The position numbers and the translations under genes were made by a program. A stretch of 64,000 nt of DNA from Leucoraja erinacea. Taxonomy: Eukaryota. The notes under the pieces are model-generated. The model saw only the letters and a list, made by a program, of their open reading frames with translations. It was not told the origin of the DNA and ran no database searches. The stretch covers positions 16,182,001 to 16,246,000 of the forward strand of contig NC_073393.1 in NCBI RefSeq assembly GCF_028641065.1, given 5' to 3'. Shown here piece after piece: positions 8,790 to 61,407 of the stretch (positions are counted from its first letter, which is position 1; the number at the start of each line of letters is the position of its first letter).

Positions 8790-10723
8790 GTAAGGGACAA
8801 TCTCTTTTCAATGATTTTAGTGTTACATTGATTCACTAATTATAACAAGCAAAAAAGTTATTGTAAATTAATCAGATAAAAACATTGTTATGTTTTTTAT
8901 TCTGTGCTGTACATTGTAATAGGATTAAGTATTGCAAATTGGACACATCCACAATGGGCATTGAATTTTCAGCTTAGACAGAGTGCCTTTTAAAGCAAAG
9001 TATTCAGTGTATTTACTGCTCTTGGATATTTATTGCAGTTATGTGGAGAGAACTAAATTGATGAAGGTTGTTTTTTGTGGTGAAGGGGATTTTAGGAGGA
9101 AGTCAAAGCCATCAATTTGCCATTTTTGATTGAACGTAGCTTGAAAGCTTTGGCCATGTCTAGCATTCATGTGTTAGGGATGTCATGATTGAGATGCAGC
9201 TTCACTTACAACTAGATTTTGTGGGATTTGCAGAACTTTCATTTGATCTATTTGTGTGAGATTGTTCAGCTATGTTAATTACATTCTGCATTTGTTGTTT
9301 AACACAATTGTAGCCCAACATTGCAGCCTCACAAAGCTAACATATCGTCATTTTTGATTTTGCCTAGTACTGCTTTTGGCATGTCCTTCTGCATTCCCCA
9401 TTCAACTAGTGTTGAATGCCAGCATGCAAGTAATGATCTGTCTCCATAAAGTTAATGGTGTGTTCCCTTCCATCAATGCTATCATGAACAGATGTATCTG
9501 CCACAGGTGAATTGGCGAGAGTGAGGTCAAGTGTTTTTTATTGTTTGTGTTGGTTCACTCACTATCAGCTATGGACTCGTTTTCAAGAGTCAGCCAACAC
9601 ACGCGCTACAAGCCAAGTTTGGGATGGAGGGTCCACAGCCACGGAATATTTTGTCTTTACTACTTCAAATTATTGTTCAACAAGAAGGATTGTTGGGAAT
9701 TGTGGCAGCTGCAATCGCCAGGCAAGTGGAGAGTATTCCATCGCACTCCTAACTTGTGCTTTGTAAGTGCTAAAAAGAACTTAGATGTTAATAGTGCAAG
9801 CAAGTTACCATAGGATATCCACCATCTGGCCTGCTTTATAGGCACGTTGTTTATCTATGGTTCAGTTGAATTTATGCTCAAAGGTGACCTTCAGGATGTT
9901 GTTGGTGGGGTATTTAAAGATGGTAATGGCATTGAATATCAGGGGTACATGACGCTAGGTATCAGCTAATAAAAGAAAGTGATTCTTAAAGATCGCTCCA
10001 GTTTTTCGAGTTCATTATGTTCCTTCCCACCTCTAATCTTCTGACATAAAAAATTCTGTGTAGTCTTGGCCCATAGCTCATGTTTCTTAATACAATTAAG
10101 GCTACTTTCACCTTCACGGCAAGATTGGAGTATTAAATTGAAGAAAAGTTAACTTTAATTTATTATTATTTCTTTAAGCCAGAAGTTTGTGATGGAGCTT
10201 CCGTTTTGTGCAGCAAAAGAAAATGCTTTGTGTTTTAAAATGGAGATGTAAAAGTTTCCGGTTGGCCGATGAGCTGCTGAGCACCAAAATCAACTTGCAC
10301 CTCAATGCTGCAATCCTTTTCATATTTCCCAAATTAATTGTCTTGTTCTTTTCTGGCTTCATGAATGAAAGTGATCAAGTTATAAATAATTTCTGGTTTA
10401 TCTTATTCATCAGAACGTGGAATCTTGCAGAGAATTCCTGCCTGTACAGAAAAGTACGGCCTTCCAAACAAACACAACATCTTTATACCATTTAATTGAA
10501 ACCCTCTGACATTAATTGACTAATTATCACATTTTGGAGGAACAGTACCTCGTATTCCGCTTGGAGTCTGCATCCTGCAGTCATGAACATTGAATTCTCC
10601 CAATTTTGTTAGCCCTTACTGACTCCTCCCCTTCCTCAGCCCTCGGGCTGTCTCCTCCCATCCCTCAGCCCTCGGGCTCCTCCTCCTTCTTTTTCCTTTC
10701 TTCTCCCCGCCACCCCCATCAGT

Positions 10724-25835: not shown

Positions 25836-26860
25836 TCTATATTAATAAAAGTCTGATCTTGACCACTTTCCTGTTGTTCTGTATATTGATTTTAGAAAAA
25901 ACGCTGCCACATACGGCTGTGATTTTTGGCCATCTTACTCAGAGTCTGCCTCCGCTGCGCAGGACAAGAGGATTTTTCCCATCAATGAAACATAAAAGTG
26001 TTATTAGTGTTTTAAAAATGTTGAGGATCTCTCTCCTGTCAATCACGCCATGAAGACCACACCCCTTCCGGTGGGAGGGGGAGGGATTATAAAACCCCGA
26101 AAGTGTGGGTGTGGCTCAGTTTCTGCAAGATAGGGAGGGAGAGGTCAGCACTCGGTCTGAGCTGTGAACCAACTGAACACACTGAATGTCTACTGAACAG
26201 TGAGTGGTGTTTTGTGGTGGTGTTTTGTGATGTTTTGATGTTTTTTATGTATGGTTTTATGGTGGTTTATGGTGGTTTCACCCTGCTTGAAATGGTATGA
26301 AACTGCATTTGAATTTGGTGGCCTTGCACCCTGCTTGAAATGGTGTGAAACTGCACTGGAATTTGGTGGCCTTGCACCCTGCTTGAGGTGGTGTGAAACT
26401 GCACTTGAATTCGGTGGCCTTGCACCCTGCTTGAAGTGGTAGGAAACTGCACTTGAATTCGATGGCCTTGCCCCCTGCTTGAAGTGGTAGGAAATTGCAG
26501 CTCAATTTGGTAGTCTTGCACCCTGCTTGAAGTGGTATGAAACTGCACTTGAATTTGGTGGCGTTGCACCCTGCTTGAAGTGGTAAGAAACTGCACTTGA
26601 ATTTGGTAGCCTTGCACCCTGCTTGAAATGGTAGGAAACTGCATTTGAATTTGGTGGCATTGCACCCTGCTTGAAATTGAATTTCAAGGAGTAGCCGTGA
26701 GTCAACTGCCAGCCCACCAGCTGTGAGTGAGCTGTCAGCACATCAGGCTTGAGTGACTGAGCTGCCAATCCAAGAATCCATTTGGCCCACAATGTCCATA
26801 CCAGCCCTCAGGAAACCAGCCCGTTCAGCCCTCAACACCCATACTAGCGCTCCAGAAAGA

Positions 26861-26898
<38 letters not shown>

Positions 26899-26989
26899 AC
26901 TGGCCCCCAATATTGGAATTGGTGGAGAGTGGAATATTTTGTTGCGGTACCTTGTGAACACGGGACCCAACGGGTCCCACTGAGTCTTG
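25836..26989 (+). mobile_element. Non-autonomous Helitron
   Basis: 5' A|TCTATATTAATAAAA, 3' hairpin GGGACCC-aac-GGGTCCC (26962-26978) followed by CTTG|T (a CTAG variant). Sits between A and T with no TSD. Confidence 0.7.
26279..26678. repeat. 48-bp minisatellite, about 8.3 copies, inside the Helitron
   Basis: Unit caccctgcttgaaatggtatgaaactgcatttgaatttggtggccttg; produces the 16-aa periodic ORFs in the track. Confidence 0.92.
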
Positions 26990-29486: not shown

Positions 29487-29947
29487 NNNNNNNNNNNNNN
29501 NNNNNNNNNNNNNNNNNNNNNNNNNNNNNNNNNNNNNNNNNNNNNNNNNNNNNNNNNNNNNNNNNNNNNNNNNNNNNNNNNNNNNNNNNNNNNNNNNNNN
29601 NNNNNNNNNNNNNNNNNNNNNNNNNNNNNNNNNNNNNNNNNNNNNNNNNNNNNNNNNNNNNNNNNNNNNNNNNNNNNNNNNNNNNNNNNNNNNNNNNNNN
29701 NNNNNNNNNNNNNNNNNNNNNNNNNNNNNNNNNNNNNNNNNNNNNNNNNNNNNNNNNNNNNNNNNNNNNNNNNNNNNNNNNNNNNNNNNNNNNNNNNNNN
29801 NNNNNNNNNNNNNNNNNNNNNNNNNNNNNNNNNNNNNNNNNNNNNNNNNNNNNNNNNNNNNNNNNNNNNNNNNNNNNNNNNNNNNNNNNNNNNNNNNNNN
29901 NNNNNNNNNNNNNNNNNNNNNNNNNNNNNNNNNNNNNNNNNNNNNNN
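29487..29947. other. Assembly gap (461 N)
   Basis: Run of N. Confidence 1.
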
Positions 29948-32900: not shown

Positions 32901-33372
32901 TACCATCATTTAAAGTGGAATTCAGAAATTCCATGTAAGATCCAAAGAGCGGAAATGTTGTAACGAATACTCCAAGAGTGTCGGCTAGAAAAGAAGCCGG
33001 GATATACTGGATTTGAAGGGAAATTTGTTTTTTTTAATTGTCTTTCAGTTCCAGAAGGTATCTTAATATTTTTGTATAAACAATGAGATGTGATGCACAA
33101 ACAGATAGGAAAATAGCATGACATGTACAATGCATGCTGGTAATATATTTTAATAGTTTTAAATAACTAAGTTATTGTGATTATTTTTTAGAATTCATCG
33201 ATTGCAGACAGATAATCTTGAATACTTAAAGATTAATATGACTGTTGTGTAATAGGTCCAATTTCGGTATTTCTATAACATAGGTGGATGTGAACGTGTA
33301 TATAATGAAGACCCTTTACTGCATGGACCGTAAAGTATTACCAGGCCATTGTAGTCTATAGAATTTCCTTGA

Positions 33373-33528
33373 TTACTTTCCGTCATCTTTAACTCTTCGT
33401 GGATTTGCCGTCTGCAGCGCAGCATATTCCGTGATCTTATCCCTAGGTTTAACGTTACCAGCATTCCCGGGTTGAGACAATTCCACAGATGCGTATGTAA
33501 GTACTTCCCGGGCGGTCCGTTGTTTTAC
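33373..33528 (-). CDS. Gene B: terminal cytoplasmic exon with second ITIM (LTYASV) and ITSM-like motif (TEYAAL)
   Basis: ggtttttcag|, phase 0. Encodes VKQRTAREVLTYASVELSQPGNAGNVKPRDKITEYAALQTANPRRVKDDGK*. Confidence 0.82.
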   Translation of the reverse strand, partial: VKQRTAREVLTYASVELSQPGNAGNVKPRDKITEYAALQTANPRRVKDDGK

Positions 33529-34276
33529 CTGAAAAACCAACGGTTGCAAAAGATGTAATTGTTGAACCAGGTTGTGGCCCGCGGATCTAGTCAGGTATCA
33601 AAAACATCCGCACAACTTTAGACGCACCACACTACCAACGTTGGGACAAACGCAGATATTGAGTAAATAGACTGGAGTAAAAAGTGCTGGAGGAACGAAC
33701 ACTGTAGGCCTGGCAACACATGTGGAACAAAAATAACAAACTATGTGATGGATTAAAATGTCGCTTGATTTTTTCATTCCACGGATGCAGGCTGGCCTGG
33801 TGAGGCGTCGTTTTTTTTTTTTTTGCACTGGATTCCATCATCTGCAGTCGCTTGTGCCAACAATCCCAGATATTCAGTGGTTGGTCTGATATTAGTGTAC
33901 ATTATGAATGATGAGGTTTCGGGGCACTTAAAATATTGTGAAACAGGCCGGTCAGCATAGTTCTAAGGGGAGATGGACAAAGGAGAGACCATGGACCATG
34001 TTTACTTGTATTTTCAGGACGCACATGAAGTTTTTAAAGCAAAGATTGACATGTTCTTGATTAGTAAGGTTGTCAAAAATTACAGGGATATGGCAGCAAA
34101 ATTAGGTTGAGTGGGAAATATAGATCAGCCATGATCCAATGACGGAGCAGACTCGATGGGCTGAATGGCCAATACCTGCCCCTGTGTCTCATGATTTATG
34201 ACATTAGGATATGGCTCTTTTGCACCTATTTTCTGCGTCGCTTTCTATGTTTTCTTCATGTGCTGCAGAATCTTAC

Positions 34277-34375
34277 TTGTGCATAGGATGTCTCCTCTTC
34301 GCTTTTCTGTCTCCCTTTCCTTTTGGAATTGCTCATATCTACAGCAGAATAAGTCAGGATGTTGTTCGCCTCAAC
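34277..34375 (-). CDS. Gene B: cytoplasmic exon with ITIM (LTYSAV) and ITSM (TSYAQ|V)
   Basis: ttcttcctgatccatgcag| and CAA|gtaaga, phase 0/0. Encodes VEANNILTYSAVDMSNSKRKGRQKSEEETSYAQ. Confidence 0.82.
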
Positions 34376-35039
34376 CTGCATGGATCAGGAAGAAAATAAT
34401 TCACATGACTGCACAAGTGCCATTATCGTTGCTTGCGTATTTGCCAGTGAGCGCAATGGAGTAATTCCAAACACATACAAAATATATGGTTTATAAATCT
34501 AAAACTATAAGACTTGTATGGGTTTTAAGTAGAATATATCCACTGAACTTAAACTTGATGGGTTTCAGCATCACTAGGTGGAATTACTCAGTTCAAACGT
34601 AAGACTTGGAGCGCTGAATGTAGTTATTATCTACGTATATGCGGAATTAATTAATCCATTTAAGTTGTCTCTTCCTATAACCACTTACACTAACGTCGCA
34701 ACTGCCGGCAAATGAATGTTAAACACAAATTGACAGATTCGCGATAGCGATGGATACTTTTGCGAAATAGTTCTAGCAGAATACTTGTTTTACAACCTTA
34801 TTTATAGATGCTTCAACCGTTTCCTCAAATGTAATATATATGTATATATACATAAATGCATACCGATTCTTCATGGCCCACGGTACTCCTTTGCTCTAAA
34901 AGTTAATGAAATTAAATTATAAATAACGGCAATACATTTCCCCGTGTCCTATTAATACTTTTTTAATGTAACAGTTAAACAAGAGCCTATCATTGTATGC
35001 AGGGAAAGCAATAAGCAATGAGATTAAATAGAATCATGC

Positions 35040-35950
35040 AGTCATAGAGTGATACACTGTGGAAACAGGCCCTTCGGCCCAACTCGTCCACACCGGCCAA
35101 TAATGTTCCAGCTACCCTAGACCCACTTGCCTGCGCTTGGTCCATAACCATCCAAACCTATCCTATCCAGTTAGCGGTCCAACTGTTTCTTAAACGATGG
35201 GATAGTCCCCGACTCAATTACCTCCTTTGGCAGCTTGTTCCATACACCCACTGTGTGAAAAAGTCACCCCTCGGATTCCTATTAAATCTTTTCCCCTTCA
35301 CCTAGAACCTACGTCCTCGATTCCCCAACTCTGGGCAAGACTGTGCATCTACCCGATCTATTCCTCTCGCGATTTAATATATCTCTATCTCCCCTCATCC
35401 TCCTACGCTCCATGGAATAGAGACCCAGCCTACTCAACCTCTCCCTATAGCTCACACCCTCTAGCCCTGGCAACATCCTCGTAAATCTTTTCTGGACCAT
35501 TTCAAGCTTGACAATATCTTTCCTATAACATGGTGTCAAGAACTGAACACAATATTCTAAATGCGGTCTCACCAACTTCTTATACCACTGCAACATGACC
35601 TCCCAACTTCTATACTCAATACTCTGACTGATGAAGGTGCCAAAAGCCTTTTTGACCAACTTGTGACTCGACCTTCAAGGAACCATGCACTTGTACTCCT
35701 AGATCTCTCTGCTCTACAACACTACCCAGAGGCCCACCATTTACTGTGTTGGTCCTGCCCTTACAAAACCACTGACTTTTGTATCATCAGCAAACTTGCT
35801 AATCTGCCCCGTATGTTCTCATCCAAATCATTGATGTAGATGCCAAACAGTAACGGGCCCAGCACCGAACCCTGTGGCACACCACTAGTCACTGGCCTCC
35901 ATTCTGAGAAGCAACCTTCCACTATCACTCTCTGCTTCCTTCCATGGAGC
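35040..35950 (-). mobile_element. CR1 RT fragment within a gene B intron
   Basis: [13 protein letters not shown] and LVRPHLEYCVQF motifs. Confidence 0.8.
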
Positions 35951-37167
35951 ATATTCGTATCCGAGAACATCGTTAAACGATGCAGGACTTTGAGGGTTGG
36001 TGCAATTATAAGAACCGTTCTTTCTTTAACGAGGACATAATGAATTTCACGGAGAGAGGAAACATAAGATTATGTTTCTAGTACGATAGGATTAATTTAA
36101 AATAAACTCGTGAATAATTGAGTTATTTAAGACAGGCGTTATTTAAGAGAGAAACGTTATCTTACTTCAAATGCAGAATGCAACTGTCCATGCAAATACA
36201 ACGTTTACTGTTCATAAATTAATAAATTATAAGAGCAGAATTAAGCCATTCGCCCTATCAATTCTACTCTGTCATTCAATTATGGCTAACCTGTCTTTCC
36301 CTCTCAACCCCATTCTCCTGCCTTCTCCCCATAACCTTTGACACACGTACTAATCAAGAATCTATCACTCTCCGCCATTAAACCTATCCATTCACTTGGC
36401 CTTCATAGTCTTCTGTGGCAATGACTTCCACGGATTCACCATCCTGACTGACGAAATTCCTCCTCACTTTCGTTCTAAATGTACGTCATTTTATTCTAAG
36501 GCTATGGCCTCTGGTCCTAGACTCTCCCACAAGTGGAAACATCCTCAACACATCCCCTCTATCCAGTCCTTTCTGTCTCCTTCTAGTTTCCATGTTTCTT
36601 AATATTCAACGATATTTTTGTGCGTTTACAACATTATTTATTCTAAATCAGGTTAAAAAAACGACAAAATTATATATCTAAGCAACATTAACGTGTTGCT
36701 CAGCATGTCATTATCCAACGGTTACATTGAGATCTATACTGCATTCGTCACATGAGATTTTACTTCAAATACCTTTTCGAAAAAAAAGTGTTCACAACGC
36801 TTAACACTGCTGCGTCTAAATACTACCCCCCTTGACTTCGATTGCGATTGCAAACCTTGTCTATAATGCATCGTATCGCGAAAATGGTTATGAATGAACT
36901 GTGGCGGCGGGAGGTTGGTAGTTGGAGGACTCTTGCAGATACAACCAAATGAGAACTTTTGAAACAATGTTAGAAAGTTTATCAATAAGAGATCATGGTG
37001 TGAATTGAATTTTCATGTGCAGCAAATTAGGATCGTTTTCTACAATTCCTTAATAAACAGCCCAAAGTTTGCATTTGTGGTTGGAAATTATTTTGACATA
37101 TCATATTTAAGTTAAAAGAGTGATCCCGCCAAGCATCCGCTATTTCCTCTCGACTGGGCACTAATAC

Positions 37168-37190
37168 CATCCTGCTCAAAGCAGTTGCAC
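37168..37190 (-). CDS. Gene B: candidate 23-nt linker micro-exon (phase 1 to 0)
   Basis: A phase-changing exon is required between the TM exon (ends phase 1) and the ITIM exon (starts phase 0). tttcag|GTGCAACTGCTTTGAGCAGGATG|gtatta fits (SATALSRM), but both splice sites are weak. Confidence 0.3.
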
Positions 37191-37440
37191 CTGAAATTCA
37201 TCTAGATTTCACTTTTCCATATCTAAAATTCAAACATACTCTTGCAAATAAGCAGAACAATATTTCTATTTCTTTCTTCTGGGATCACTATTAAATTATA
37301 AATACTGAATTATCGGTCATGTCCGGTGCAATTCAAATTCCTGCAAAATTGCATAGCAGCTCTATCATTTAGAAATTGTATTAATTATCTACATTGTTGT
37401 CTAGGTTCTCAGAAAACACATCGGTGAGCATAATACTTAC

Positions 37441-37545
37441 TTTTATTTGTCGAACGGCACCTCAGGACAATGATAAATACAAACACCAAAATGGCGATTC
37501 CACCGACCCCAGAAGCCCAGATATAGAGATATTGGTTGGCGAGTT
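37441..37545 (-). CDS. Gene B: transmembrane exon (uncharged TM)
   Basis: catctttcag| and A|gtaagt, phase 1/1, 105 nt. Encodes ELANQYLYIWASGVGGIAILVFVFIIVLRCRSTNK. Confidence 0.85.
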
Positions 37546-38824
37546 CTGAAAGATGAGGAAAAATAATGAATTACACTGTGGGCACTTTTGATACATTAAA
37601 AGAATAGTTATTGGAATTACTTGTGACTGAACTGATTTCTAAGCTTACGATAACTACACGGAGCAGCGCGAGATAACTGTAAAAAGATAGTCAAATTTGC
37701 ATTTCATTTTTAAAGTATTTTTTATTCTGACATCCGTAATTATTTTTTACTGGCAAAATGTAACATGCGACCTGAGTAATTTGGCTGCCGTGAATAATTT
37801 GCACCGTATCAGTCTCCGGTGTACTGAGCATTATTTAAATCAGGGGAATAAGTATTGGTGGAAGGGAGTAATGTTTATTTTACTTGACTTGGCTTGGCAA
37901 TGGCGCCCCATAGTCTGACTAACAATTCGCTTGAATTGAATAAAATAGTTTATTTAATATCCTTCGCTGATCTGCAGTAGCAAGGATCAGTGCATCATGC
38001 TCATTTTATTGTGTAGGAAAGAACTGCAGATGCTGGTTTAAGGCACAAAATGCTGGGGTAACTCAGCGGGGCAGGCAGCATCTCTGGAAAGAAGGAATGG
38101 GCGCGTTTCGGCCCTTCTTCAGATCCTGCTTATGTTATTATTTGTTAGATCCTGCATCGCGATCGTGCATGTGAAACAGATATAAATAGAGGGCTCGCCA
38201 AGATTGGTCGTCAGTAGCTACTAAATCGGCTACTTCCATCAGCGAGGACAAAAAAAGTAGGCACATTTCGCATTCCACCATCATAGCCGTAGTTCCATAT
38301 ATGTTGCCCTGTGAATACACAGGGATTGCAACCATTATTGAAGGCGGAAACACATTTTCTCGAGCAGCCGGGGTTGGCAATAACCTTAGCCCTCACCATT
38401 GACGCACATATCCAGTTAAAGGTAAAATATAAATATACATTGCCATTATTTCTGTGAATCCATAATTTAGTACCATATTAGTGAAAAAGATTAGGCCATG
38501 TCAAGCAAAGGAGGGGCCTTCCGAGCCCATTGTCCATGGCTTGGAAAGGAAACATCCTGACAGCTCAAGTCTGGAATCTCGAGATGCACTATTTTAGGGG
38601 CAGGCTCCAGAACAAAGACACGTTCCTCGACATCTGTCACGAAATCCGGCAATATAAACTAAACAATAAATTTAGTATGAAGCCTCTGGAGAATGAGCAA
38701 ACGACGCAAAATGTTTAGAGGGAAAATAAATACCATCCCTTCCATCTCATATACATACTTCCAGAGTTACCAGAAATAATAAGTTTTTATGGGACCCGTT
38801 AGAATAGACAGTCATTACGACGAT

Positions 38825-38828
38825 ATTA

Positions 38829-38881
<53 letters not shown>

Positions 38882-38905
38882 ATTATTATTATATTTATTA
38901 TTATT
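38825..38905. repeat. (ATT)n microsatellite in gene B intron 3, absent from the gene C paralog
   Basis: Direct observation. Confidence 0.9.
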
Positions 38906-38994
38906 TGTGATCCCTTTAAACGTAACTTTGTCAACATCAAGAAACGCAGACTTCAATAATAAGTTATAAAATTATACAGTGTTTCAAGTCATAC

Positions 38995-39303
38995 CTTGGT
39001 CGGGTTTGCGAAGGGGTTGCGTGGCAATGGCGGGTCTTTGGAGGGAGATGTGTATCACCAGACAAATGTAAATATTCCCGTTCGCCTCCGACTGCGTCAT
39101 GGATAATGAACTGGAAGCCGTGTACAGCCCTTCACTATTTTTCTGTTTAATGGTATCGACCTTAGCTGTAACAGCAACGCTATTTTTATACCATAGAAGG
39201 GTTAGATCACCCGGGTAAAACTCGGCCGTTTTACAGACAAGCGTTGTAGCTGCAGATGAATTGCTCTCGGATATCCAGTTAATCTTCAGTGGAGTTGGAA
39301 GGT
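38995..39303 (-). CDS. Gene B: Ig C1-set exon (not in the ORF track)
   Basis: cccacag| and G|gtatga, 309 nt, open frame. Encodes DLPTPLKINWISESNSSAATTLVCKTAEFYPGDLTLLWYKN...GLYTASSSLSM...YICLVIHISLQRPAIATQPLRKPDQ. Confidence 0.92.
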
Positions 39304-39801: not shown

Positions 39802-40122
39802 CACATACTGTTAGTTCTGACCCTGTTCCTTCTCCGCTAATTTTCCCCTGACGCATGACTACACAGCGATAGTTTCCCGAATCCTCGTAGGTCGTGTTCA
39901 GTAAACCAAAATATCCGCCTGATCGATTTTTGACGGTGAATCGCTTTCTGCCATCAGCGTCGCTTTGTATATATTCATTCTCCCCCTGTTTTCGCCAACG
40001 CACTTCGATTCCCGAACTGTCATCCGCTAGTGGGATTATGCAGTGAAAGGTGACGTTTGCTCCCTTCAATATAACCTTTCGTTCTGGAATTTGGGTAACG
40101 TGGATCGCAGTTTTTTCAGCAG
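39802..40122 (-). CDS. Gene B: V-set exon with germline-joined J-like G strand (NKp30/SIRP-like V)
   Basis: ccaacag| and G|gtgagt, phase 1/1, 321 nt. Encodes AAEKTAIHVTQIPERKVILKGANVTFHC...VRWRK...EDSGNYRCVVMRQGKISGEGTGSELTVC. Confidence 0.92.
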
Positions 40123-40305: not shown

Positions 40306-40351
40306 CTGTGAAAATAATCACGGCGAGAGACAGAATCAGGACCAGAAACAT
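40306..40351 (-). CDS. Gene B (inhibitory VJ-C1 receptor): signal-peptide exon
   Basis: ATG...ACA G|gtacat, 46 nt, MFLVLILSLAVIIFT; paralogous to 58196-58241. Confidence 0.85.
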
Positions 40352-47220: not shown

Positions 47221-47751
47221 TTAGAAACATAGAAACATAGAAATTAGGTGCAGGAGTAGGCCGTTCGGCCCTTCGAGCCTGCACCGCAATTCAATATGAT
47301 CATGGCTGATCATCCAACTCAGTATCCCGTACCTGCCTTCTCTCCATATCCCCTGATCCCCTTAGCCACAAGGGCCACATCTAACTCCCTCTTAAATATA
47401 GCCAATGAACTGGCCTCAACTACCCTCTGTGGCAGAGAGTTCCAGATATTCACCACTGTCTGTGTGAAAAAAGTTCTTCTCATCTCGGTTTTAAAGGATT
47501 TCCCCCTTATCCTTAAGCTGTGACCCCTTGTCCTGGGCTTCCCTAACATCGGGAACAATCTTCCCGCTTCTAGCCTGTCCAACCCCTTAAGGATTTTGTA
47601 AGTTTCTATAAGATCCCCTCTCAATCTCCTAAATTCTAGAGAGTATAAACCAAGTCTATCCAGTCTTTCTTCATAAGACAGTCCTGACATCCCAGGAATC
47701 AGTCTGGTGAACCGTCTCTGCACTCCCTCTATGGCAATAATGTCCTTCCTA

Positions 47752-48616
47752 AGATAATAAGATAAGATAAGATAAGATACATTTATTGTCATTTGGACCC
47801 CTTGAGGTCCAAACGAAATGCCGTTTCTGCAGCCATACATACAAACACATAGACCCAAGACACAACATAATTTACATAAACATCCATCACATCGCTGTGA
47901 TGGAAGGCCAAATAAACTTATCTCTCCACTCCACCGCACCCTCCCCCCCCCCCATGTCAGAGTCAAAGTCAAAGCCCCCGGCTGGCGATGGCAATTGTCC
48001 CGCGGCCATTTAAGCCACGCCGGGTGGTGCGAGGTCGCACACCGGGTCTTGGTGTTAGAGCCCCCGGTGTGCGCTCGCAGAGTCCCGCGGCCATTCCCAG
48101 CCGCGCGGGGCGGTGATGTTAGGCCCCGCTCCAGGAGCTCTTCAACCCCGCAACTCGGGCGGGGGAAGTCGCCGTTGCGAGAGCCCTGAAAAGCGGTCTC
48201 CCTCCAGGGAGCCGCGGGCTCCCGGTGCCGCCGTCCACAGACCTGCCGTTGAAGCCTCCGACTCTCCGGTCGGGCCGCAGCAGCAGCAGCAGCAGCGCTC
48301 CTCCACCGCTCCACCCGCTCCGGACTCGGCCAGCCCCGCGACGGCGACGGTGAGTCGTAGCACCAGAGTCCCCGGTCTCTTCCTGTTGGAGGCCGCTCCT
48401 CGTTGCGGCCCCAACGACAACGGAAACCCGACGAGAAAAGGTCGGGTCTCCAGTGCAGGGAGAGATTTAAAAAGTTTCCCCCCCCCTCCCACCCCCCCCC
48501 CACACACACACCCAACAACAAAAATAACAAAAACTACATTAAAACACAGACAGAAAATAATAAAACGCGGACAGACTGCAGAGGCCGCTGCTGGCCAGAG
48601 CCGCGCCGCCCACCAC
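47752..48616 (-). mobile_element. Non-coding GC-rich ~0.85 kb retro-type element inserted into CR1 ORF2
   Basis: (taaga)n tail with aataaa on the minus strand. Related copies at about 44262-45075 and 20772-21600. CR1 resumes at cagatttggagacc. Confidence 0.65.
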
Positions 48617-50424
48617 AGATTTGGAGACCAAAATGTACGAAATACTCCAGGTGTGGTCTCACCAAGACCCTGTACAACTGCAGTAGAACCTCCCTGCTCC
48701 TATACTCAAATCCTTTTGCAATGAAAGCTAACATACCATTCGCTTTCCTTACTGCCTGCTGCACCTGCATGCCTACCTTCAATGACTGGTGTATCATGAC
48801 ACCCAGGTCTCGCTGCATCTCCCCCTTTCCCAATCGGCCACCATTTAGATAATAGTCTGCTTTCCCGTTTTTGCCACCAAAATGGATAACCTCACATTTA
48901 TCCACATTATACTGCATCTGCCAAACATTTGCCCACTCACCCAGCCTATCCAAGTCACCTTGCAGTCTCCTAGCATCCTCCTCACAGCTAACACTGCCCC
49001 CCAGCTTAGTGTCATTCGCAAACTTGGAGATGTTGCCTTCAATTCCCTCATCCAGATCATTAATATATATCGTAAATAGCTGGGGTCCCAGCACTGAGCC
49101 TTGCGGTACCCCACTAGTCACTGCCTGCCATTGTGAAAAGGACCCGTTTACTCCTACTCTTTGCTTCCTGTTTGCCAGCCAGTTCTCTATCCACATCAAT
49201 ACTGAACCCCCAATGCCGTGTACTTTAAGTTTGTATACTAATCTCTTTTGTGGGACCTTGTCGAAAGCCTTCTGGAAGTCCAGATACACCACATCCACTG
49301 GTTCTCCCCTATCCACGCTACTAGTTACATCCTCGAAAAATTCTATAAGATTCGTCAGACATGATTTACCTTTCGTAAATCCATGCTGACTTTGTCCAAT
49401 GATTTCACCACTTTCCAAATGTGCTGCTATCCCATCTTTAATAACTGACTCTAGCAGTTTCCCCACTACCGATGTTAGACTAACTGGTCTGTAATTCCCC
49501 ATTTTCTCTCTCCCTCCCTTCTTAAAGAGTGGGGTTACGTTTGCTACCAGCCAATCTTCAGGAACTACTCCAGAATCTAAAGAGTTTTGAAAGATTATTA
49601 CTAATGCATCCACTATTTCTGGAGCTAATTCCTTAAGTACTCTGGGATGCAGCCTATCTGGCCCTGGGGATTTATCGGCCTTTAATCCAGTCAATTTACC
49701 CAACACCACTTCCCGGCTAACCTGGATTTCACTTAAATTCCTCCAACTCCTTTGACCCGCGGTCCCCTGCTATTTCCGGCAAATTATTTATGTCTTCCTT
49801 AGTGAAGATGGAACCAAAGTAGTTATTCAATTGGTCCGCCATATCCTTGTTCCCCATGATCAACTCACCTGTTTCTGACTGCAAGGGACCTACATTTGTT
49901 TTAACTAATCTCTTTCTTTTCACATATCTATAAAAACTTTTGCAGTCAGTTTTTATGTTCCCTGCCAGTTTTCTTTCATAATCTATTTTTCCTTTCCTAA
50001 TTAAGCCCTTTGTCCTCTGCTGGTCTTTGAATTTCTCCCAGTCCTCCAGTATGCTGCTTTTTCTGGCTAATTTGTACGCATCATCCTTCGCTTTGATACT
50101 ATCCCTGATTTCCCTTGTTATCCATGGATGTACTACCTTCCCTGATTTATTCTTTTGCCAAACTGGGATGAACAATTTTTGTAGTTCATCCATGCAGTCT
50201 TTAAATGCCATTGCATATCCATCATCAACCCTTTTAGAATTAATTGCCAGTCAATCTTGGCCAATTCACGTCTCATACCCTCAAAGTTACCTTTCTTTAA
50301 GTTCAGAACCATTGTTTCTGAATTAACAATGTCACTCTCCATCCTAATGAAGAACTCAACCATATTATGGTCACTCTTGCCCAAGGGGGCACGTACAACA
50401 AGATTGCTAACTAACCCTTCCTCA

Positions 50425-51910
50425 TGGAAGTAGTTCCAGAGGATTGGCGGGTAGCAAACGTAACCCCGCTTTTTAAGAAGGGAGGGAGAGAGAAAACGGG
50501 GAATTACAGACCAGTTAGCCTAACATCGGTAGTGGGGAAACTGCTAGTCAGTTATTAAAGATGGGATAGCAGCACATTTAGAAAGTGGTGAAATCATTGG
50601 ACAAAGTCAGCATGGATTTACGAAAGGTAAATCATGTCTGACGAATCTTATAGAATTTTTCGAGGATGTAACTAGTAGCGTGGATAGGGGAGAACCAGTG
50701 GATGTGGTGTATCTGGACTTCCAGAAGGCTTTCGACAAGGTCCCACATAAGAGATTAGTATACAAACTTAAAGCACATGGCATTGGGGGTTCAGTATTGA
50801 TGTGGATAGAGAACTGGCTGGCAAACAGGAAGCAAAGAGTAGGAGTAAACGGGTCCTTTTCACAATGGCAGGCAGTGACTAGTGGGGTACCGCAAGGCTC
50901 AGTACTGGGACCCCAGCTATTTACAATATATATTAATGATCTGGATGAGGGAATTGAAGGCAATATCTCCAAGTTTGCGGATGACACTAAGCTGGGGGGC
51001 AGTGTTAGGTGTGAGGAGGATGCTAGGAGACTGCAAGGTGACTTGGATAGGCTGGGTGTGTGGGCAAATGTTTGGCAGATGCAGTTTAATGTGGATAAAT
51101 GTGAGGTTATCCATTTTGGTGGCAAAAACGGGAAAGCAGATTATTATCTAAACGGTGGCCGATTGGGAAAGGGGGAGATGCAGCGAGACCTGGGTGTCAT
51201 GGTACACCAGTCATTGAAGGTAGGCATGCAGGTGCAGCAGGCAGTAAAGAAAGCGAATGGCATGTTGGCTTTCATAGCAAGAGGATTTGAGTATAGGAGC
51301 AGGGAGGTTCTACTGCAGTTGTATAGGGTCTTGGTGAGACCACACCTGGAGTATTGCGTGCAGTTTTGGTCTCCAAATCTGAGGAAGGACATTATTGCCA
51401 TAGAGGGAGTGCAGAGAAGGTTCACCAGACTGATTCCTGGGATGTCAGGACTGTCTTATGAAGAAAGACTGGATAGACTTGGTTTATACTCTCTAGAGTT
51501 TAGGAGATTGAGAGGGGATCTTATAGAAACTTACAAAATTCTTAAGGGGTTGGACAGGCTAGATGCAGGAAGATTGTTCCCGATGTTGGGGAAGTCCAGG
51601 ACAAGGGGTCACAGCTTAAGGATAAGGGGGAAATCCTTTAAAACCGAGATGAGGAGAACTTTTTTCACACAGAGAGTGGTGAATCTCTGGAACTCTCTGC
51701 CACAGAGGGTAGTTGAGGCCAGTTCATTGGCTATATTTAAGAGGGAGTTAGATGTGGCCCTTGTGGCCAAGGGGATCAGAGGGTATGGAGAAAAGGCAGG
51801 TACGGGATACTGAGTTGGATGATCAGCCATGATCATATTAAATGGCGGTGCAGGCTCGAAGGGCCGAATGGCCTACTCCTGCACCTAATTTCTATGTTTC
51901 TATGTTTCTA
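50425..51910 (+). mobile_element. 5'-truncated CR1 of the same subfamily inserted in opposite orientation within the host CR1
   Basis: ORF 50680-51813 is an RT (FADDTK) ending in a (ttctatgt)n tail. Host sequence continues across the insertion (ctcat...tcaatacccag). Confidence 0.88.
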
Positions 51911-56727: not shown

Positions 56728-56998
56728 ATGTTTCTCTTCCAGCTCCTGTCTCTCTCGATGATGTTTTATACAGGTATCCTTATATTTTCTTTGAAACTAT
56801 TTTAAATGCCAGGTTAAAACGCGCGAAATTAATTTTTCCATATGTCGCTGTTTAACGAATCATACCCAAATTTATCTGGAGTGAACCATTCCAAGCTCAA
56901 TATTACCAATCAAATTGTGTACCAGTTTTGCAGCAGGTGCCGAAGAAACTGCGATCCACGTGACTCAAATTCCGGAGATAGTGGTTATATTGATGGGC
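56728..56998 (+). pseudogene. Truncated paralog: leader exon (56728-56773) plus first ~20 codons of a V exon (from 56937)
   Basis: MFLFQLLSLSMMFYT G|gtatcc, then gcag|GAEETAIHVTQIPEIVVILMG, which matches AAEKTAIHVTQIPERKVILKG. Homology stops before the first V-domain Cys. Confidence 0.8.
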
Positions 56999-57719
56999 TC
57001 ACAGATATTCTCGAATTCCATGACGATCTACGCAATTAAAATCGAAAACTATGCAACTAAAACCACTTTATGTTCGCTAACTGGATTCCCGCTAAATGCG
57101 ATTCTTCCCGATAGCTGTCGAAAGCTGAAGTAGACTCTACTCGGTGTTAAATTTGACATCCAGATGAGCAGTGGACAATATCGGTGCCAACAGCAACAAA
57201 ATCTGAATCTTGATCCCAGTACCGTTTCTTCCTCTGCTTTATGGCCCTGATGCATTCGGCTATGACGTTCTTTTACCTTTTAGTTCTACTATTCGGACTT
57301 GTCATTTCCATCTGTTGTACTTGGATATACTTGCGATGATGGCAAAATATTGTATAACCCGATGTGAGATCAATTACAATGGCGTCCAGCAACACAGGGG
57401 TCCCTTAATTAATTTACTGCACGATTTGTAATTATCGGCGCAAATTGTTCCATACTCTCTCTGTAATCTCGCCCTGATCTCTGGCATTTAGAGATTCCAC
57501 AACTCTGATAAGTCTGATAATTCCCTAGTTTAATTGCAATCTAAGAGCTAAATTCAACAATTATTTTTAAAAACCTCCCCGCTTCGCTTTAGCCCTGCAA
57601 AAACACCTCCCAAACATTATCTTGTTAGATACCAGCTACACTCTTACTTATGTTCCTTCAGCGAATGCGAAATGTAGTCCCACCCACGTAAGAAAACGCG
57701 CCAAACTTCATCGCAACAT

Positions 57720-58195: not shown

Positions 58196-58241
58196 ATGTT
58201 TCTGGTCCTGATTCTGTCTCTCTCCGTGATTATTTTCACAG
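58196..58241 (+). CDS. Gene C (putative activating VJ-C1 receptor): signal-peptide exon
   Basis: MFLVLILSLSVIIFT, donor G|gtacat, 46 nt. Confidence 0.85.
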
Positions 58242-58424
58242 GTACATGAACGATCTCGTATAGACTTATCTAAATGCCAAAATATTCCAAACTATTCCTG
58301 GCTTAACTGATGAAATGTATTTTTCAATTTGTCTGTTAGTTTTGTTTTTCATGCCAATGTACTATCAAAAGAGTTGGTTCTACATTGAATATAATTAACC
58401 AAATCTTAAACGTTTTTCCAACAG

Positions 58425-58745
58425 CTGCTGAAAAAACTGCGATCCACGTTACCCAAATTCCAGAACGAAAGGTTATATTGAAGGGAGCAAACGTCACCTT
58501 TCACTGCATAATCCCACTTGCGGATAACAGTTCGGGAATCGAAGTGCGTTGGCGAAAACAGGGCGAGAATGAATATATACAAAGCGACGCTGATGGCAGA
58601 AAGCGATTCACCGTCAAAAATAGATCAGGCGGATATTTTGATTTACTGAACACGACCTACGAGGATTCGGGAAACTATCGCTGTGTAGTCATGCGTCAGG
58701 GGGAAATTAGCGGAGAAGGAACAGGGTCAGAACTAACAGTATGTG
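58425..58745 (+). CDS. Gene C: V-set (VJ-type) exon
   Basis: ccaacag| and G|gtgagt, 321 nt. Differs from the gene B V exon at 3 amino acids. Confidence 0.92.
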
Positions 58746-59249
58746 GTGAGTGACGAAAGTGGACAGAATACTTGAGAATATTGCACAAGAATTATATCTC
58801 TATATTAGACTTCCGATTTGTGAGAGAGAAGGGCCCCATGAAATTATGTGAAAACCATACAATTTGATGCTCGTTTTATTGAATGTACAATATTATTATG
58901 CCGAAAATATATGTTAAAATAAAGCAAATAAGATGTATTTTAAAACAAGTGACAATAGCTTTTAATCAAGAGATCATCACACCTTCAAATACGATTCAGC
59001 ATCAATCACTATCAATTGCACCTCCAAAAGATTCCACATTTCATGTCATTGAACGCTGGTTGAGTTGAAACAAAATTAACTTTCCGCGGCGGTTCTTGCG
59101 CTCCGCTGTATGAGGTAACAGATATCAATAATTCGTTAACTTCTGTCTTCAAGGGATCGGGTAAAATATGTGGATTTCTAAACAAGCTTCTCCTACTGTC
59201 TGTTTAATTTAATTCTAGTAATATGATATGTTCGCACTCTGTCCCACAG

Positions 59250-59558
59250 CCCTTCCAACTCCACTGAAGATTAACTGGATATCCGAGAGCAATTCATCTG
59301 CAGCTGCAACGCTTGTCTGTAAAACGGCCGAGTTTCACCCGGGTGATCTAACCCTTCTATGGTATAAAAATAGCGTTGCTGTTACAGCTAAGGCTAATAC
59401 CATTAAACAGAAAAATAGTGAAGGGTTGTACACGGCTTCCAGTTCATTATCTATGACGCAGTCGGAGGCCAGCGGGAATATTTACATTTGTCTGGTGATA
59501 CATATCTCCCTCCAAAGACCCGCCATTGCCACGCACGCCCTTCGCAAACCCGGTCAAG
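59250..59558 (+). CDS. Gene C: Ig C1-set exon
   Basis: cccacag| and G|gtatga, 309 nt. Encodes ALPTPLKINW...LVCKTAEFHPGDLTLLWYKN...YICLVIHISLQRPAIATHALRKPGQ. Confidence 0.92.
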
Positions 59559-60092
59559 GTATGACTTGAAACACTGTATAATTTTATAACTTATTATTGA
59601 AGTCTGAGTGTGTTGATATTGACAACGTTTGTTTTAAAAGGATCACAAATGCCATTCATATCATCGTAAACACTGTCTACTCTAACGGGTCCCAGAACGA
59701 CTCGTTATTTCAGGTAAATGTCGAAATGTGAAGGGATGGCATTCATATTCGCTCGAAATATTTTGCATTGTTTGCTCGTTACTAAGCATTCCCCGGAAGC
59801 CTCATACTAAAGCAATTGTTTAGTGCATGTTACTGAATTTGCTAACAGATGTCTAGTTACCGCCCTAAATTGGTGTAACCCCTTCATTTTGGAGACGCTT
59901 TTTAAAAAAGTTCTAGAATTCAGCTAATTGTCAGAAAGTTTCCATTACAAGCCAGGGGGCAATGGCCTTGGACGCTACTTCTTTCTCTCAGTCTGAAGAA
60001 GGGTCACAGCCCGAAATGTCATGCATTCCTTCTATCCAGAGAAACTGTCTATCTTCAGTTTAAACCAGCATCTGCAGTTATTTCCTACACAG

Positions 60093-60353
60093 CTACTGCC
60101 TTTATTCCCTTTATCCCTTCACGTCTGTGAAACGTCCGAGTTTCACCCGAGCAAGTTAACTCTTGTATGGCATAAACATGGCACTGTAGTTACAACTGGG
60201 GCTAATAGCGTTAAACAGAAACATACTGAAGGGCTGTACGCAGTTTCTACTTCATTGTCCATGACACAGTCGGAGCCGAATGGAAAGGTTTACATTTATC
60301 TGGTGTCTCATACCTCCCTCCAAAGAGTCGCAAATTCAACGTCGTTTTCAAAG
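60093..60353 (+). pseudogene. Degenerate duplicate C1 exon in the C1-TM intron of gene C
   Basis: VCETSEFHPSKLTLVWHKHG...GLYAVSTSLSMTQSEPNGKVYIYLVSHTSLQR. The second Cys is replaced by Tyr, the 5' end is replaced by a Penelope-type fragment, and the retained gtatgac donor is now phase 0. Confidence 0.8.
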
Positions 60354-61311
60354 GTATGACTTAAAAACACTTTGACGTTTTGTAACCTACGATTCAATTC
60401 TGAGTTTGTGGATGATAAATCATGAAAATTGAGAAGCAAATAATACTATCCTCGTAAATAGCATTGACACAATTCTCCAGAAAATTCCCGCAAAATTTGT
60501 TATTTTCAAATTGTGGAAACGAATTAGAAGGGGCGGTTTTGACGTTTGCTCCACACACAACCACTTGCAGCTCTTTATTGGATTCCTGTTCCTATCATTG
60601 TGGATTCACCCCGATGTGTAATCCTGTGTATAAAAAATGACGTCCCTTCCAACCTGCTTGGATTTAAAGCAGGGAACTGTTTCATAACTTGTTTCTGGTC
60701 AAGCGCCGTATGGTGGGTTTCAACAATTACTATTGGTTATTTTGATCGGCATGGACGAGCTGGGCCAATGGCCGGTTTCCGTGCTGTTTCACTCAATATA
60801 ATAATTTCATGTGGGGGGCGATGGTGGGGAGCCATTTATTGCCAATCGCTAAACGTTTTTTGAGAGGACAGGGCGTCCTGGGACTTACTACATTGTATTT
60901 ACCATATGATAATGACCGCAGGTTAATATCCTTATGATCTGCAGGCGTGTCGGGAAAAAGTACTTGATACTGTACATAAGGGAAAGAAGATTTGCCTTGG
61001 ACCTCAACCAAATCAGCACTTCCCTAAGACGATGGAGCTTTGTGTGCTGCTGCATTCCAATTAAAAGTGAAGGAATATATCCACCCCATCCCCCTCATCC
61101 TCCATCCTACTTATTTGTCTGAAATTAAACTCGGTGGCAATTTATTCATTCCACTCTTCGGGACAACGTTGTTTCTAATATCCGATTTTAGCATAATGTT
61201 TTTGCATGTAATTATGAGCGAAAGCAAATCATCAAATTCTAAAGAGATTTTTTAAAACAAACAATGGTCGGCTCAAAGTAGAATTCAGTATCTGTCATTC
61301 TAAACTTGCAG

Positions 61312-61407
61312 AAACAGCCATCTGGAGTTCTGTCCGTCCGGCGGTTGTAATCGCATTTTTGTTCATTATGACTGTCATTGTCGGATTCTGCAAACTGAAG
61401 AATAACT
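61312..61407 (+). CDS. Gene C: transmembrane exon with Arg at the outer end of the TM
   Basis: aacttgcag| and T|gtaagtattatg (same donor context as the gene B TM exon), phase 1/1, 96 nt. Encodes ETAIWSSVRPAVVIAFLFIMTVIVGFCKLKNN. Confidence 0.8.

What the first reader, a model, noticed from the sequence alone, without database searches (positions are those of the whole stretch)
33373..34375. SIRPalpha-like ITIM-ITSM-ITIM-ITSM tail in two short exons absent from the ORF track
Seen: the spliced tail reads ...NILTYSAVDM...EETSYAQ|VKQRTAREVLTYASVEL...KITEYAALQT. Established: mammalian SIRPalpha has the same alternating four-tyrosine arrangement (ITYADL, TEYASI, LTYADL, SEYASV) behind J-containing V and C1 domains and recruits SHP-1/2. 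Inference: B is either a deep SIRP homologue in cartilaginous fish, raising the question of an ancient CD47-type 'don't eat me' axis, or a close convergence. The two exons resemble each other (LTYxxV, about 20 aa, TxYAxV/L) and may have arisen by exon duplication.
Basis: partly seen in the sequence, partly recalled or inferred. Interest (0 to 1): 0.8.

Follow-up and report, generated by a model that had tools for sequence, protein, structure and literature searches.

The report
Skate inhibitory SIRP-like receptor tail
The two short exons are the real end of an intact, apparently unannotated little-skate immune-receptor gene whose tail carries four conserved tyrosine "off-switch" motifs laid out as in mammalian SIRPalpha. 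The gene belongs to a shark, ray and chimaera family that databases already label SIRP-like, and true SIRP ancestry is not shown.

Summary
Observation confirmed. On the minus strand, 34277-34375 and 33373-33528 are open exons with canonical splice sites. They join in phase 0 and read LTYSAV, TSYAQ|V, LTYASV and TEYAAL.

The TM exon (phase 1) cannot join the first tail exon (phase 0) directly. I found a 32-nt linker exon (34864-34895) that restores the frame. The result is a 7-exon, 355-aa model, the same length as the Mobula orthologue.

Orthologues in sawfish, devil ray and stingray, and paralogues as far as elephant shark, keep all four tyrosines. The Tyr-Tyr spacing is fixed at 22-23 residues. 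This fits binding of tandem SH2 domains (SHP-1/2), which is inferred and not shown.

RefSeq already names these relatives "SIRPalpha-like", "SIRPbeta-1-like" or "tapasin-related-like". I found no paper on them.

SIRP ancestry is unresolved:
- The profile score ties SIRPalpha with Ig light chains.
- Fold searches tie it with many V-C proteins.
- The gene has one C1 domain, not two.
- No tetrapod SIRP sequence could be retrieved for a tree.

Four RNA runs gave no reads on any exon, so expression is untested.

The parts
40306..40351 (-). Leader exon of gene B (MFLVLILSLAVIIFT, phase-1 donor)
   Evidence: It matches the leader of the RefSeq gene-C protein P0167.
39802..40122 (-). V exon with a germline-joined J-like strand (GTGSELTV)
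   Evidence: Pfam V-set/Ig. Splice sites and phase 1/1. 79% identical to Pristis P0004.
38995..39303 (-). Single C1-set domain exon
   Evidence: Pfam C1-set, E 1.2e-13. Phase 1/1.
37441..37545 (-). Transmembrane exon with no charged residue in the membrane span (LANQYLYIWASGVGGIAILVFVFIIVLRCRSTNK)
   Evidence: Aligns to the orthologue TM and, at DNA level, to the gene C TM exon.
34864..34895 (-).
   Evidence: Found by scanning with orthologue linkers. Sequence and splice sites ttttag|AG...TCG|gtatgc. It restores the frame between TM and cy1.
34277..34375 (-). Cytoplasmic exon 1 = tail module 1, holding ITIM LTYSAV and TSYAQ
   Evidence: 65% identical to P0004.
34340..34357 (-). ITIM 1, LTYSAV
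   Evidence: Read from the sequence.
34277..34291 (-). TSYAQ, completed to ITSM TSYAQV by the first codon of cy2 (33526-33528)
   Evidence: Phase 0/0 junction.
33373..33528 (-). Cytoplasmic exon 2 = tail module 2, with the stop codon at 33373-33375
   Evidence: 64% identical to P0004.
33484..33501 (-). ITIM 2, LTYASV
33415..33432 (-). ITSM-like TEYAAL (L at +3)
   Evidence: It is TEYAEL, TEYAEI or TEYAQL in relatives.
58196..61407 (+). Gene C, the paired partner. Its leader, V and first C1 exons are 95-98% identical to gene B as an inverted duplicate. It also has a second C1 exon and a TM exon containing Arg.
   Evidence: RefSeq P0167 (Leucoraja erinacea) matches its first C1 exon 100%.

Best explanation
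The two exons are the last two coding exons of an intact seven-exon gene (leader, V with J-like strand, one C1, uncharged TM, 32-nt linker, tail module 1, tail module 2; 355 aa). The gene encodes an inhibitory member of a multigene V-C1 immunoreceptor family found across cartilaginous fish.

Each tail exon is one module: an ITIM-type tyrosine followed 22-23 residues later by a TxY-type tyrosine. The likely mechanism (inferred) runs as follows:
1. Ligand engagement by the V domain brings the receptor to Src-family kinases.
2. The kinases phosphorylate both tyrosines of a module.
3. The two phosphotyrosines bind the tandem SH2 domains of SHP-1 or SHP-2 as a pair and activate the phosphatase, as the SIRPalpha bisphosphoryl module does.
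4. This dampens activating signals in the same cell.

The neighbouring inverted duplicate, gene C, has a nearly identical V-C1 and an arginine in its TM. It would be the activating or decoy partner of a paired-receptor set.

Shown here: gene structure, frame, domain types, conservation and spacing. Inferred: phosphorylation, SHP binding, ligand and cell type.
For: - All seven exons are open, with AG/GT sites and consistent phases; the CDS is 1068 nt, or 355 aa.
- Pfam finds V-set/Ig and C1-set.
- In the V tree, gene B lies in a starred batoid clade with Pristis P0004, Mobula P0160 and Hemitrygon P0161.
- Those proteins align colinearly to every exon. Their linker resembles the 32-nt exon.
- All four tyrosines are kept in the batoid orthologues, and relatives from sharks to chimaera carry one to three of the same modules. 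The Tyr-Tyr spacing is 23 in almost every module and 22 in batoid module 1.
- The human SIRPalpha SHP-2-activating peptide has the same design with spacing 24 (PMC5589908).
- Four motifs in 83 aa has a chance probability of about 9e-5.
- Gene C shares 95-98% identity through V and C1 and has Arg in its TM.
- Horn shark P0002 (no tail) and P0162 (tail) share an identical V over the aligned part, so the pairing recurs in another species.
Against: - No RNA read lies on the TM, linker, cy1 or cy2 exons in four RNA runs. Only 5-25% of each run was read and the tissues are unknown.
- No Leucoraja protein with this tail turned up in any protein search, although gene C has a RefSeq model. The gene may be silent, weakly expressed or unannotated.
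- The linker exon rests on a borderline similarity score (22, at the 95th percentile of the shuffle null) plus correct phase and position. Its donor, TCG|gtatgc, is mediocre.
- No biochemical evidence exists for any member of the family.
Confidence: 0.75

Rival explanations
1. The gene and its family are true (co-)orthologues of tetrapod SIRPs. In that case the V-C1 ectodomain and the two-module tail both descend from a SIRP gene of the jawed-vertebrate ancestor, possibly with a CD47-type ligand.
For: - The family profile hits the SIRPalpha ectodomain (2wng) 4th of 11,765 PDB matches: V-C1 63.4 bits and domain 3 45.5 bits.
- The two nearest named ESM-Atlas clusters of the Mobula orthologue are SIRPalpha clusters, score 0.96.
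- RefSeq names most tailed members SIRPalpha-like.
- The tail shares TYAxL...TEYAx[IL]Q and near-equal spacing with the human peptide.
- Some family members have V-C1-C1, including gene C and P0026.
- The paired inhibitory/Arg-TM organisation resembles SIRPalpha/SIRPbeta.
Against: - Ig light-chain V-C scores the same (61-63 bits).
- The V exon alone finds IgNAR, TCR and FGFR but no SIRP in the top 60 PDB hits.
- No tetrapod SIRP was seen among the 150 best V-exon hits: every single-V-type hit whose source I looked up was chondrichthyan, and the only non-chondrichthyan hits looked up were reptile multi-V proteins.
- Fold searches do not single out SIRP.
- Gene B and its batoid orthologues have one C1 domain.
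- RefSeq names for the family are inconsistent: tapasin-related, CD276, NCR3LG1, Ig lambda.
- ITIM+TEY tails also occur in PD-1, BTLA and Siglecs (from my own knowledge), so the tail could be convergent.
Confidence: 0.25
2. Gene B is a recently silenced or never-expressed duplicate. Its exons are still open only because too little time has passed for them to decay.
For: - There are zero RNA reads on four exons in four runs.
- No protein model of it is in the collections, although the neighbour gene C has one.
- The TM-to-cy1 intron is full of LINE fragments.
- The linker exon is the most diverged exon and has a weak donor.
Against: - All 355 codons are open across seven exons, with canonical sites.
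- The tail is about as conserved against Pristis (64-65%) as the C1 exon is (62%), and every tyrosine is kept.
- The RNA sampling was shallow and the tissues are unknown.
Confidence: 0.15
3. The tail works mainly as a switch or adaptor site for other SH2 proteins (SAP/EAT-2, SHIP, Csk, Grb2) and not as an SHP-1/2 docking pair.
For: TSYAQV fits the TxYxx[V/I] switch motif. ITSMs can switch between SHP-2 and SHIP in the presence of SH2D1A, as summarised in PMC5413580.
Against: The second tyrosine of module 1 is TVYAQT in most sharks and chimaera, SSYAQV in Mobula and ASYAQV in Hemitrygon, so the T at -2 and V/I at +3 signature is not conserved. What is conserved is the pairing and the 22-23-residue spacing, which points to a two-SH2 reader.
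Confidence: 0.15
4. The two ORFs are chance open frames, or exons of another transcript unrelated to the V-C1-TM exons upstream.
For: There is no transcript evidence, and the tail exons lie 3 kb beyond the TM exon.
Against: The same order V-C1-TM-linker-module 1-module 2 sits in single RefSeq proteins of three batoids, with 62-79% identity per exon. Phases fit, and the chance probability of the motifs is about 9e-5.
Confidence: 0.03

Closest known systems
RefSeq-predicted batoid proteins: XP_051884095.1 (Pristis pectinata), and the Mobula hypostoma and Hemitrygon akajei 'tyrosine-protein phosphatase non-receptor type substrate 1-like' proteins (P0004, P0160, P0161)
   Same: They have the same exon order, one V and one C1, an uncharged TM, a short linker, two tail modules with all four tyrosines and the same spacing, and a length of 355-357 aa. 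They form a starred clade with gene B in the V tree.
   Different: Identity is 62-79% per exon. The linker differs in sequence and length (HGDTDTADHEDL against QRSTVGHEES). They are computer predictions with no published study that I could find.
Mammalian SIRPalpha (SHPS-1 / PTPNS1 / CD172a)
   Same: Both have a V domain with a J-like strand followed by C1-set domains, a single uncharged TM, and four cytoplasmic tyrosines in two ITIM + xEY pairs. Flanks are similar (TYAxL, TEYAx[IL]Q) and spacing is 22-23 against 24. Both have a paired Arg/Lys-TM partner gene next door.
   Different: Gene B has one C1 domain instead of two, and a much shorter juxtamembrane region. Sequence similarity of the ectodomain is no higher than to Ig light chains. 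Ligand, expressing cells and synteny are unknown.
Other ITIM+ITSM receptors: PD-1, BTLA, CD33-type Siglecs, PECAM-1 (from my own knowledge, apart from the list in PMC5413580)
   Same: Each has one membrane-proximal ITIM followed about 20-25 residues later by a TxY motif that together engage SHP-2 or SHP-1.
   Different: Those have a single pair, and V-only or V-C2 ectodomains without a C1-set domain.
UrIg / UrIg2 (non-rearranging shark VJ-C1 genes, PMC12227049; PDB 9dmx)
   Same: Both have a germline-joined VJ exon plus C1-set domains in cartilaginous fish. UrIg2 is a top PDB hit of the C1 exon and of the model.
   Different: UrIg2 has many more C domains (9 in nurse shark, 11 in epaulette shark), is a single gene linked to the Ig/TCR loci, and the paper reports no ITIM. 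The family profile scores it lower (49 bits) than SIRPalpha.
B7-H6 (NCR3LG1) and butyrophilins
   Same: They give the best rigid two-domain superposition of the predicted ectodomain (Z 15.3, rmsd 4.0 over 193 residues). Some family members carry this name in RefSeq.
   Different: The gene B constant domain scores as C1-set (51.6 bits), well above CD80-like C2-set (22 bits). The tails are unrelated.

Membership tests
Chondrichthyan V-C1 'SIRP-like' receptor family (database-predicted) | N-terminal V domain with a GxGxxLxV J-like strand, encoded by one exon | tested here: met
   GTGSELTV sits at the end of the V exon. The V exon scores E 1e-37 to 1e-17 against family members.
Chondrichthyan V-C1 'SIRP-like' receptor family (database-predicted) | C1-set domain beginning (V)PPTPLK | tested here: met
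   Gene B has LPTPLKINW... and scores Pfam C1-set at 1.2e-13.
Chondrichthyan V-C1 'SIRP-like' receptor family (database-predicted) | Tail built of modules xxYAxL/V...(22-23 residues)...xYAxx, one module per exon | tested here: met
   Gene B has two modules, with spacings of 22 and 23.
Chondrichthyan V-C1 'SIRP-like' receptor family (database-predicted) | Groups with family members in a tree | tested here: met
   The V-exon tree gives a 99* clade with three batoid proteins. This is a quick tree of V columns only.
SIRP family (tetrapod SIRPalpha/beta/gamma) | Ectodomain of V + two C1-set domains | tested here: not met
   Gene B has one C1 exon, and no second C1 lies between 37570 and 38990. Gene C has two.
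SIRP family (tetrapod SIRPalpha/beta/gamma) | V domain with a J-like strand and C1-set constant domains | tested here: met
   The profile alignment to 2wng pairs the J strands.
SIRP family (tetrapod SIRPalpha/beta/gamma) | Sequence closer to SIRPs than to other V-C1 families | tested here: inconclusive
   SIRPalpha V-C1 scores 63.4 bits and Ig light-chain V-C 61-63 bits. Fold Z values are tied. The Atlas features favour SIRPalpha. No tetrapod SIRP sequence could be fetched for a tree.
SIRP family (tetrapod SIRPalpha/beta/gamma) | SIRPalpha type: four cytoplasmic tyrosines in two ITIM-type pairs | tested here: met
   LTYSAV/TSYAQV and LTYASV/TEYAAL. The human motifs come from PMC5413580 and PMC5589908.
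SIRP family (tetrapod SIRPalpha/beta/gamma) | Conserved synteny with the tetrapod SIRP locus | not tested
The window holds only receptor genes and repeats.
SIRP family (tetrapod SIRPalpha/beta/gamma) | Binds CD47; recruits SHP-1/SHP-2 when phosphorylated | not testable with these tools
   Needs binding and pull-down experiments.
ITIM ([S/I/V/L]xYxx[I/V/L]) and ITSM (TxYxx[V/I]) motifs | Consensus match in a cytoplasmic segment behind a TM | tested here: met
   LTYSAV and LTYASV are ITIMs, and TSYAQ|V is an ITSM. TEYAAL has L at +3 and is therefore ITSM-like only.
UrIg / UrIg2 | One VJ followed by many C1-type domains; single conserved gene linked to MHC or the Ig/TCR complex | tested here: not met
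   Gene B has one C1 domain, belongs to a multigene cluster and has an ITIM tail.

The most novel reading that the evidence does not exclude
The cartilaginous-fish family is the sister of tetrapod SIRPs, and its 23-residue two-tyrosine tail exon is the same module as the SIRPalpha SHP-2-activating motif. If so, a SIRPalpha/SIRPbeta-type paired system, and possibly a CD47-like self-marker axis, already existed in the ancestor of jawed vertebrates.
Probability: 0.25. Interest if true: 0.65.

Novelty: new member of a known kind. Interest (0 to 1): 0.4.

Why it matters
The work gives a complete, testable gene model for an inhibitory receptor that appears to be missing from the little-skate protein set. 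The model includes a 32-nt exon that gene finders easily miss.

It also shows that a two-tyrosine module with fixed 22-23-residue spacing has been kept from chimaeras to rays. That is a clear prediction of tandem-SH2 (SHP-1/2) docking in the oldest living jawed vertebrates.

Together with the Arg-TM neighbour, it documents a paired inhibitory/activating receptor set in a skate. If the family proves to be sister to SIRPs, it would date that signalling design to the gnathostome ancestor.

As things stand, the SIRP-like label already exists in RefSeq, so the gain is annotation and a sharpened hypothesis. It is not a new kind of system.

Tried and rejected
1. Direct TM-to-cy1 splicing is rejected. 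The phase-1 donor gives AGT TGA, and the phase-2 donor gives a stop after 7 codons.
2. My first scans for an intermediate exon used strict splice scores and found only weak candidates, such as 37213-37240 'ICLNFRYGK'. These were dropped once the linker at 34864-34895 was found by similarity.
3. A phase-0 read-through donor, TGT|gttttc, was considered. It is a very weak site and is no longer needed.
4. RNA support: four runs were laid on 33300-37700, and only repeats were covered.
5. I tried three word searches to fetch tetrapod SIRP sequences for a tree, with P0004, the family alignment and the P0086 ectodomain (one search timed out). Only cartilaginous-fish proteins, one tilapia protein and one unnamed MetaClust protein were returned, so no SIRP-inclusive phylogeny could be built.
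7. BLASTP of cy1 against cy2 found nothing. A Smith-Waterman shuffle test did show similarity.
8. Foldseek and VIA-align did not discriminate among V-C families.
9. No search was run with a joined spliced model. Every search used single exons by reference or database proteins. In one search only phases and the four split codons were checked.
10. I did not put the human SIRPalpha peptide from PMC5589908 into any tool. The comparison with it was made by eye.

Full report
**What is there**

The finding lies on the minus strand. Stop-to-stop frames and the sequence around them show two short exons.
- cy1 runs 34375->34277. Its acceptor is tcctgatccatgcag|GTT, with an in-frame TGA directly upstream, and its donor is CAA|gtaaga.
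- cy2 runs 33528->33373. Its acceptor is ccgttggtttttcag|GTA, and the stop codon is at 33373-33375.
- Both sides of the junction are phase 0.
- LTYSAV and LTYASV fit the ITIM consensus. TSYAQ|V fits TxYxx[V/I] only because of the splice. TEYAAL has L at +3 and is ITSM-like.

**The gene**

Upstream on the same strand lie four more exons:
- a leader exon, 40351-40306;
- a V exon, 40122-39802, ending in the J-like strand GTGSELTV;
- one C1-set exon, 39303-38995 (Pfam C1-set 1.2e-13);
- a TM exon, 37545-37441, with no charged residue in the membrane span.

All Ig-type exons are phase 1/1.

The TM donor (AAT AAA A|gtaagt) is phase 1, and the only acceptor that opens the ITIM frame of cy1 is phase 0. 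A direct join reads AGT TGA. Splice-score scans gave only poor intermediate exons.

The orthologous proteins carry a 10-15-residue linker between TM and module 1. Scanning the intron with those linkers pointed to 34895-34864. The sequence there is ttcattaacttttag|AG CAA AGG AGT ACC GTG GGC CAT GAA GAA TCG|gtatgc. It is 32 nt, runs from phase 1 to phase 0, and encodes (K)QRSTVGHEES. Compare HGKTAGHEDL in Pristis and KQESRTILSTHEGL in horn shark.

With this exon the model has 1068 nt and 355 aa. That is the length of the Mobula orthologue, and every site is AG/GT. I checked phases and the four split codons only.

**More than chance**

The motif [SIVLT]xYxx[IVL] occurs at 0.0027 per residue in all open frames of the window. 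Four in 83 residues has a Poisson P of about 9e-5.

Conservation is the stronger argument.
- A phmmer search of the V exon against 1.84 billion representatives and word searches returned a large family.
- All its single-V members whose source I looked up, or that a search named, come from cartilaginous fish: Pristis, Mobula, Hemitrygon, Hypanus, Leucoraja, Heterodontus, Heptranchias, Scyliorhinus, Mustelus, Stegostoma, Chiloscyllium and Callorhinchus.
- Pristis XP_051884095.1 aligns colinearly to V (79%), C1 (62%), TM (51%), cy1 (65%) and cy2 (64%).
- In a V-exon tree, genes B and C sit in a starred clade with the Pristis, Mobula and Hemitrygon proteins.
- Those three keep all four tyrosines.
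- Across the family, the tail is an array of one to three (perhaps more) modules of the form xxYAxLDL...KK...TxYAxx. The Tyr-Tyr distance is 23 in almost every module, and 22 in batoid module 1.

**Exon duplication**

BLASTP sees no alignment between the two exons. A local-alignment shuffle test does: score 49 with 0 of 2000 shuffles for gene B, and up to score 72 in elephant shark. One module equals one exon here, and module number varies among relatives.

**Context**

Gene C on the plus strand is an inverted duplicate of gene B.
- The block holding the leader and V exons is 98% identical, and the C1 block 95%.
- Gene C then continues with a second C1 exon and a TM exon containing Arg (ETAIWSSVRPAVVIAFLF...).
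- The two TM exons are still alignable at DNA level.
- RefSeq's 'tapasin-related protein-like [Leucoraja erinacea]' (P0167) matches gene C's first C1 exon 100%. This agrees with earlier notes that the genome is little skate.
- No Leucoraja protein with gene B's tail appeared in any search, so gene B seems to lack a protein model.

**Expression**

I laid four RNA runs on 33300-37700. There was zero depth on the TM, linker, cy1 and cy2 exons. Only LINE and SINE parts were covered, and mostly at 90-95% likeness. Each run was read to only 5-25% and the tissues are not known to me. This is absence of evidence, and it does not refute the model.

**Mechanism**

The following is shown:
- an uncharged TM;
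- two tyrosine pairs;
- strict 22-23-residue spacing kept from chimaeras to rays.

The following is inferred. Each doubly phosphorylated module docks the tandem SH2 domains of SHP-1 or SHP-2. The human SIRPalpha peptide ITYADLNL...HTEYASIQ (spacing 24) does this and activates SHP-2 (PMC5589908). ITIM/ITSM motifs recruit SHP-1/2 more generally (PMC12975943, PMC5413580).

The T at -2 and V/I at +3 signature of the second tyrosine is not conserved: it is TVYAQT, SSYAQV or ASYAQV in relatives. A SAP-type switch is therefore less likely than bidentate SHP docking.

**Is it a SIRP?**

For:
- The family profile finds the SIRPalpha ectodomain 4th of 11,765 PDB matches, with V-C1 at 63.4 bits and domain 3 at 45.5 bits.
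- The nearest named ESM-Atlas clusters of the Mobula orthologue are SIRPalpha, score 0.96.
- RefSeq calls most tailed members 'tyrosine-protein phosphatase non-receptor type substrate 1-like'.
- The tail flanks resemble the human ones.

Against, or neutral:
- Ig light-chain V-C scores the same, 61-63 bits.
- The V exon alone finds IgNAR, TCR and FGFR but not SIRP in the top 60 PDB hits.
- I saw no tetrapod SIRP among the best 150 of 1.8 billion proteins. I looked up the sources of 20 of these hits. Fifteen were chondrichthyan family members and five were reptile multi-V proteins.
- Foldseek is swamped by Fab light chains, with B7-H6 giving the best TM-score.
- VIA-align ties UrIg2, B7-H6, PD-L2, butyrophilins and SIRPgamma at Z 14-15.
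- Gene B and its batoid orthologues have one C1 domain, not two.
- RefSeq names for the family are inconsistent: SIRPbeta-1-like, tapasin-related-like, CD276, NCR3LG1-like, Ig lambda-like.
- ITIM+TEY tails also occur in PD-1, BTLA and Siglecs (from my own knowledge), so convergence is a live option.

A proper tree, intron-phase comparison and synteny test were therefore not done. An earlier, untested note puts AMFR 186 kb from the window.

**Literature**

Searches for SIRP with shark, elephant shark, cartilaginous fish or ITIM found no description of this family. UrIg/UrIg2 (PMC12227049) are different genes with many C domains and no ITIM reported.

**Verdict**

The function is very probably inhibitory, through paired phosphotyrosines. 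The gene is a new, apparently unannotated member of a database-predicted family whose SIRP-like label already exists. SIRP orthology remains possible, at about one in four.

Noticed in passing
window 38987-39003 (minus) and 59549-59569 (plus): In both gene B and gene C, reading through the C1 donor gives the same short ending (...RKPDQGMT* in B, ...RKPGQGMT* in C). RefSeq's only model of gene C (P0167, 228 aa) ends this way. This is either a secreted V-C1 isoform or a truncated prediction.
   Followed up: partly
window 56936-57007 (+): A fragment resembling the start of the V exon (GAEETAIHVTQIPEIVVILMGSQI, 67% to gene B) lies about 1.4 kb upstream of gene C's V exon. It is probably a dead partial duplicate.
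   Followed up: no
window 3672-3992 and 8495-8839 (+): A third receptor gene, gene A, has a C1-set exon and a TM exon with a PWWIPLC motif and a KLCKGKG stop-transfer. It resembles the tail-less subfamily that RefSeq names NCR3LG1-like or Ig-lambda-like (P0049, P0062).
   Followed up: no
P0002 and P0162 (Heterodontus francisci): Over the part of the V domain present in both (P0162 begins within it), the two horn-shark proteins are identical, yet one has the two-module tyrosine tail and the other does not. The same pairing therefore occurs outside skates, or these are isoforms of one gene.
   Followed up: partly
window 38750-38971: A long AAT-type microsatellite (a poly-Asn frame) lies just downstream of gene B's C1 exon, where the B/C identity block ends (79% at 38754-38826, then nothing).
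   Followed up: no
window 48630-49450 and 50546-51366; also 47222-47755 and 51377-51910: Two reverse-transcriptase-bearing LINE copies face each other as an inverted pair at 97% identity between genes B and C. LINE fragments also fill the TM-to-cy1 intron (35312-36069).
   Followed up: no
window 29487-29947: Assembly gap of 461 N. I left it untouched.
   Followed up: no
window 26267-26792 (minus frames): A tandem repeat gives long open frames of repeated 'QIQVQFHTTSSRVQGH'-type units, next to a poly-G/poly-C run at about 26850-26930. It is probably satellite-like DNA and not a gene.
   Followed up: no
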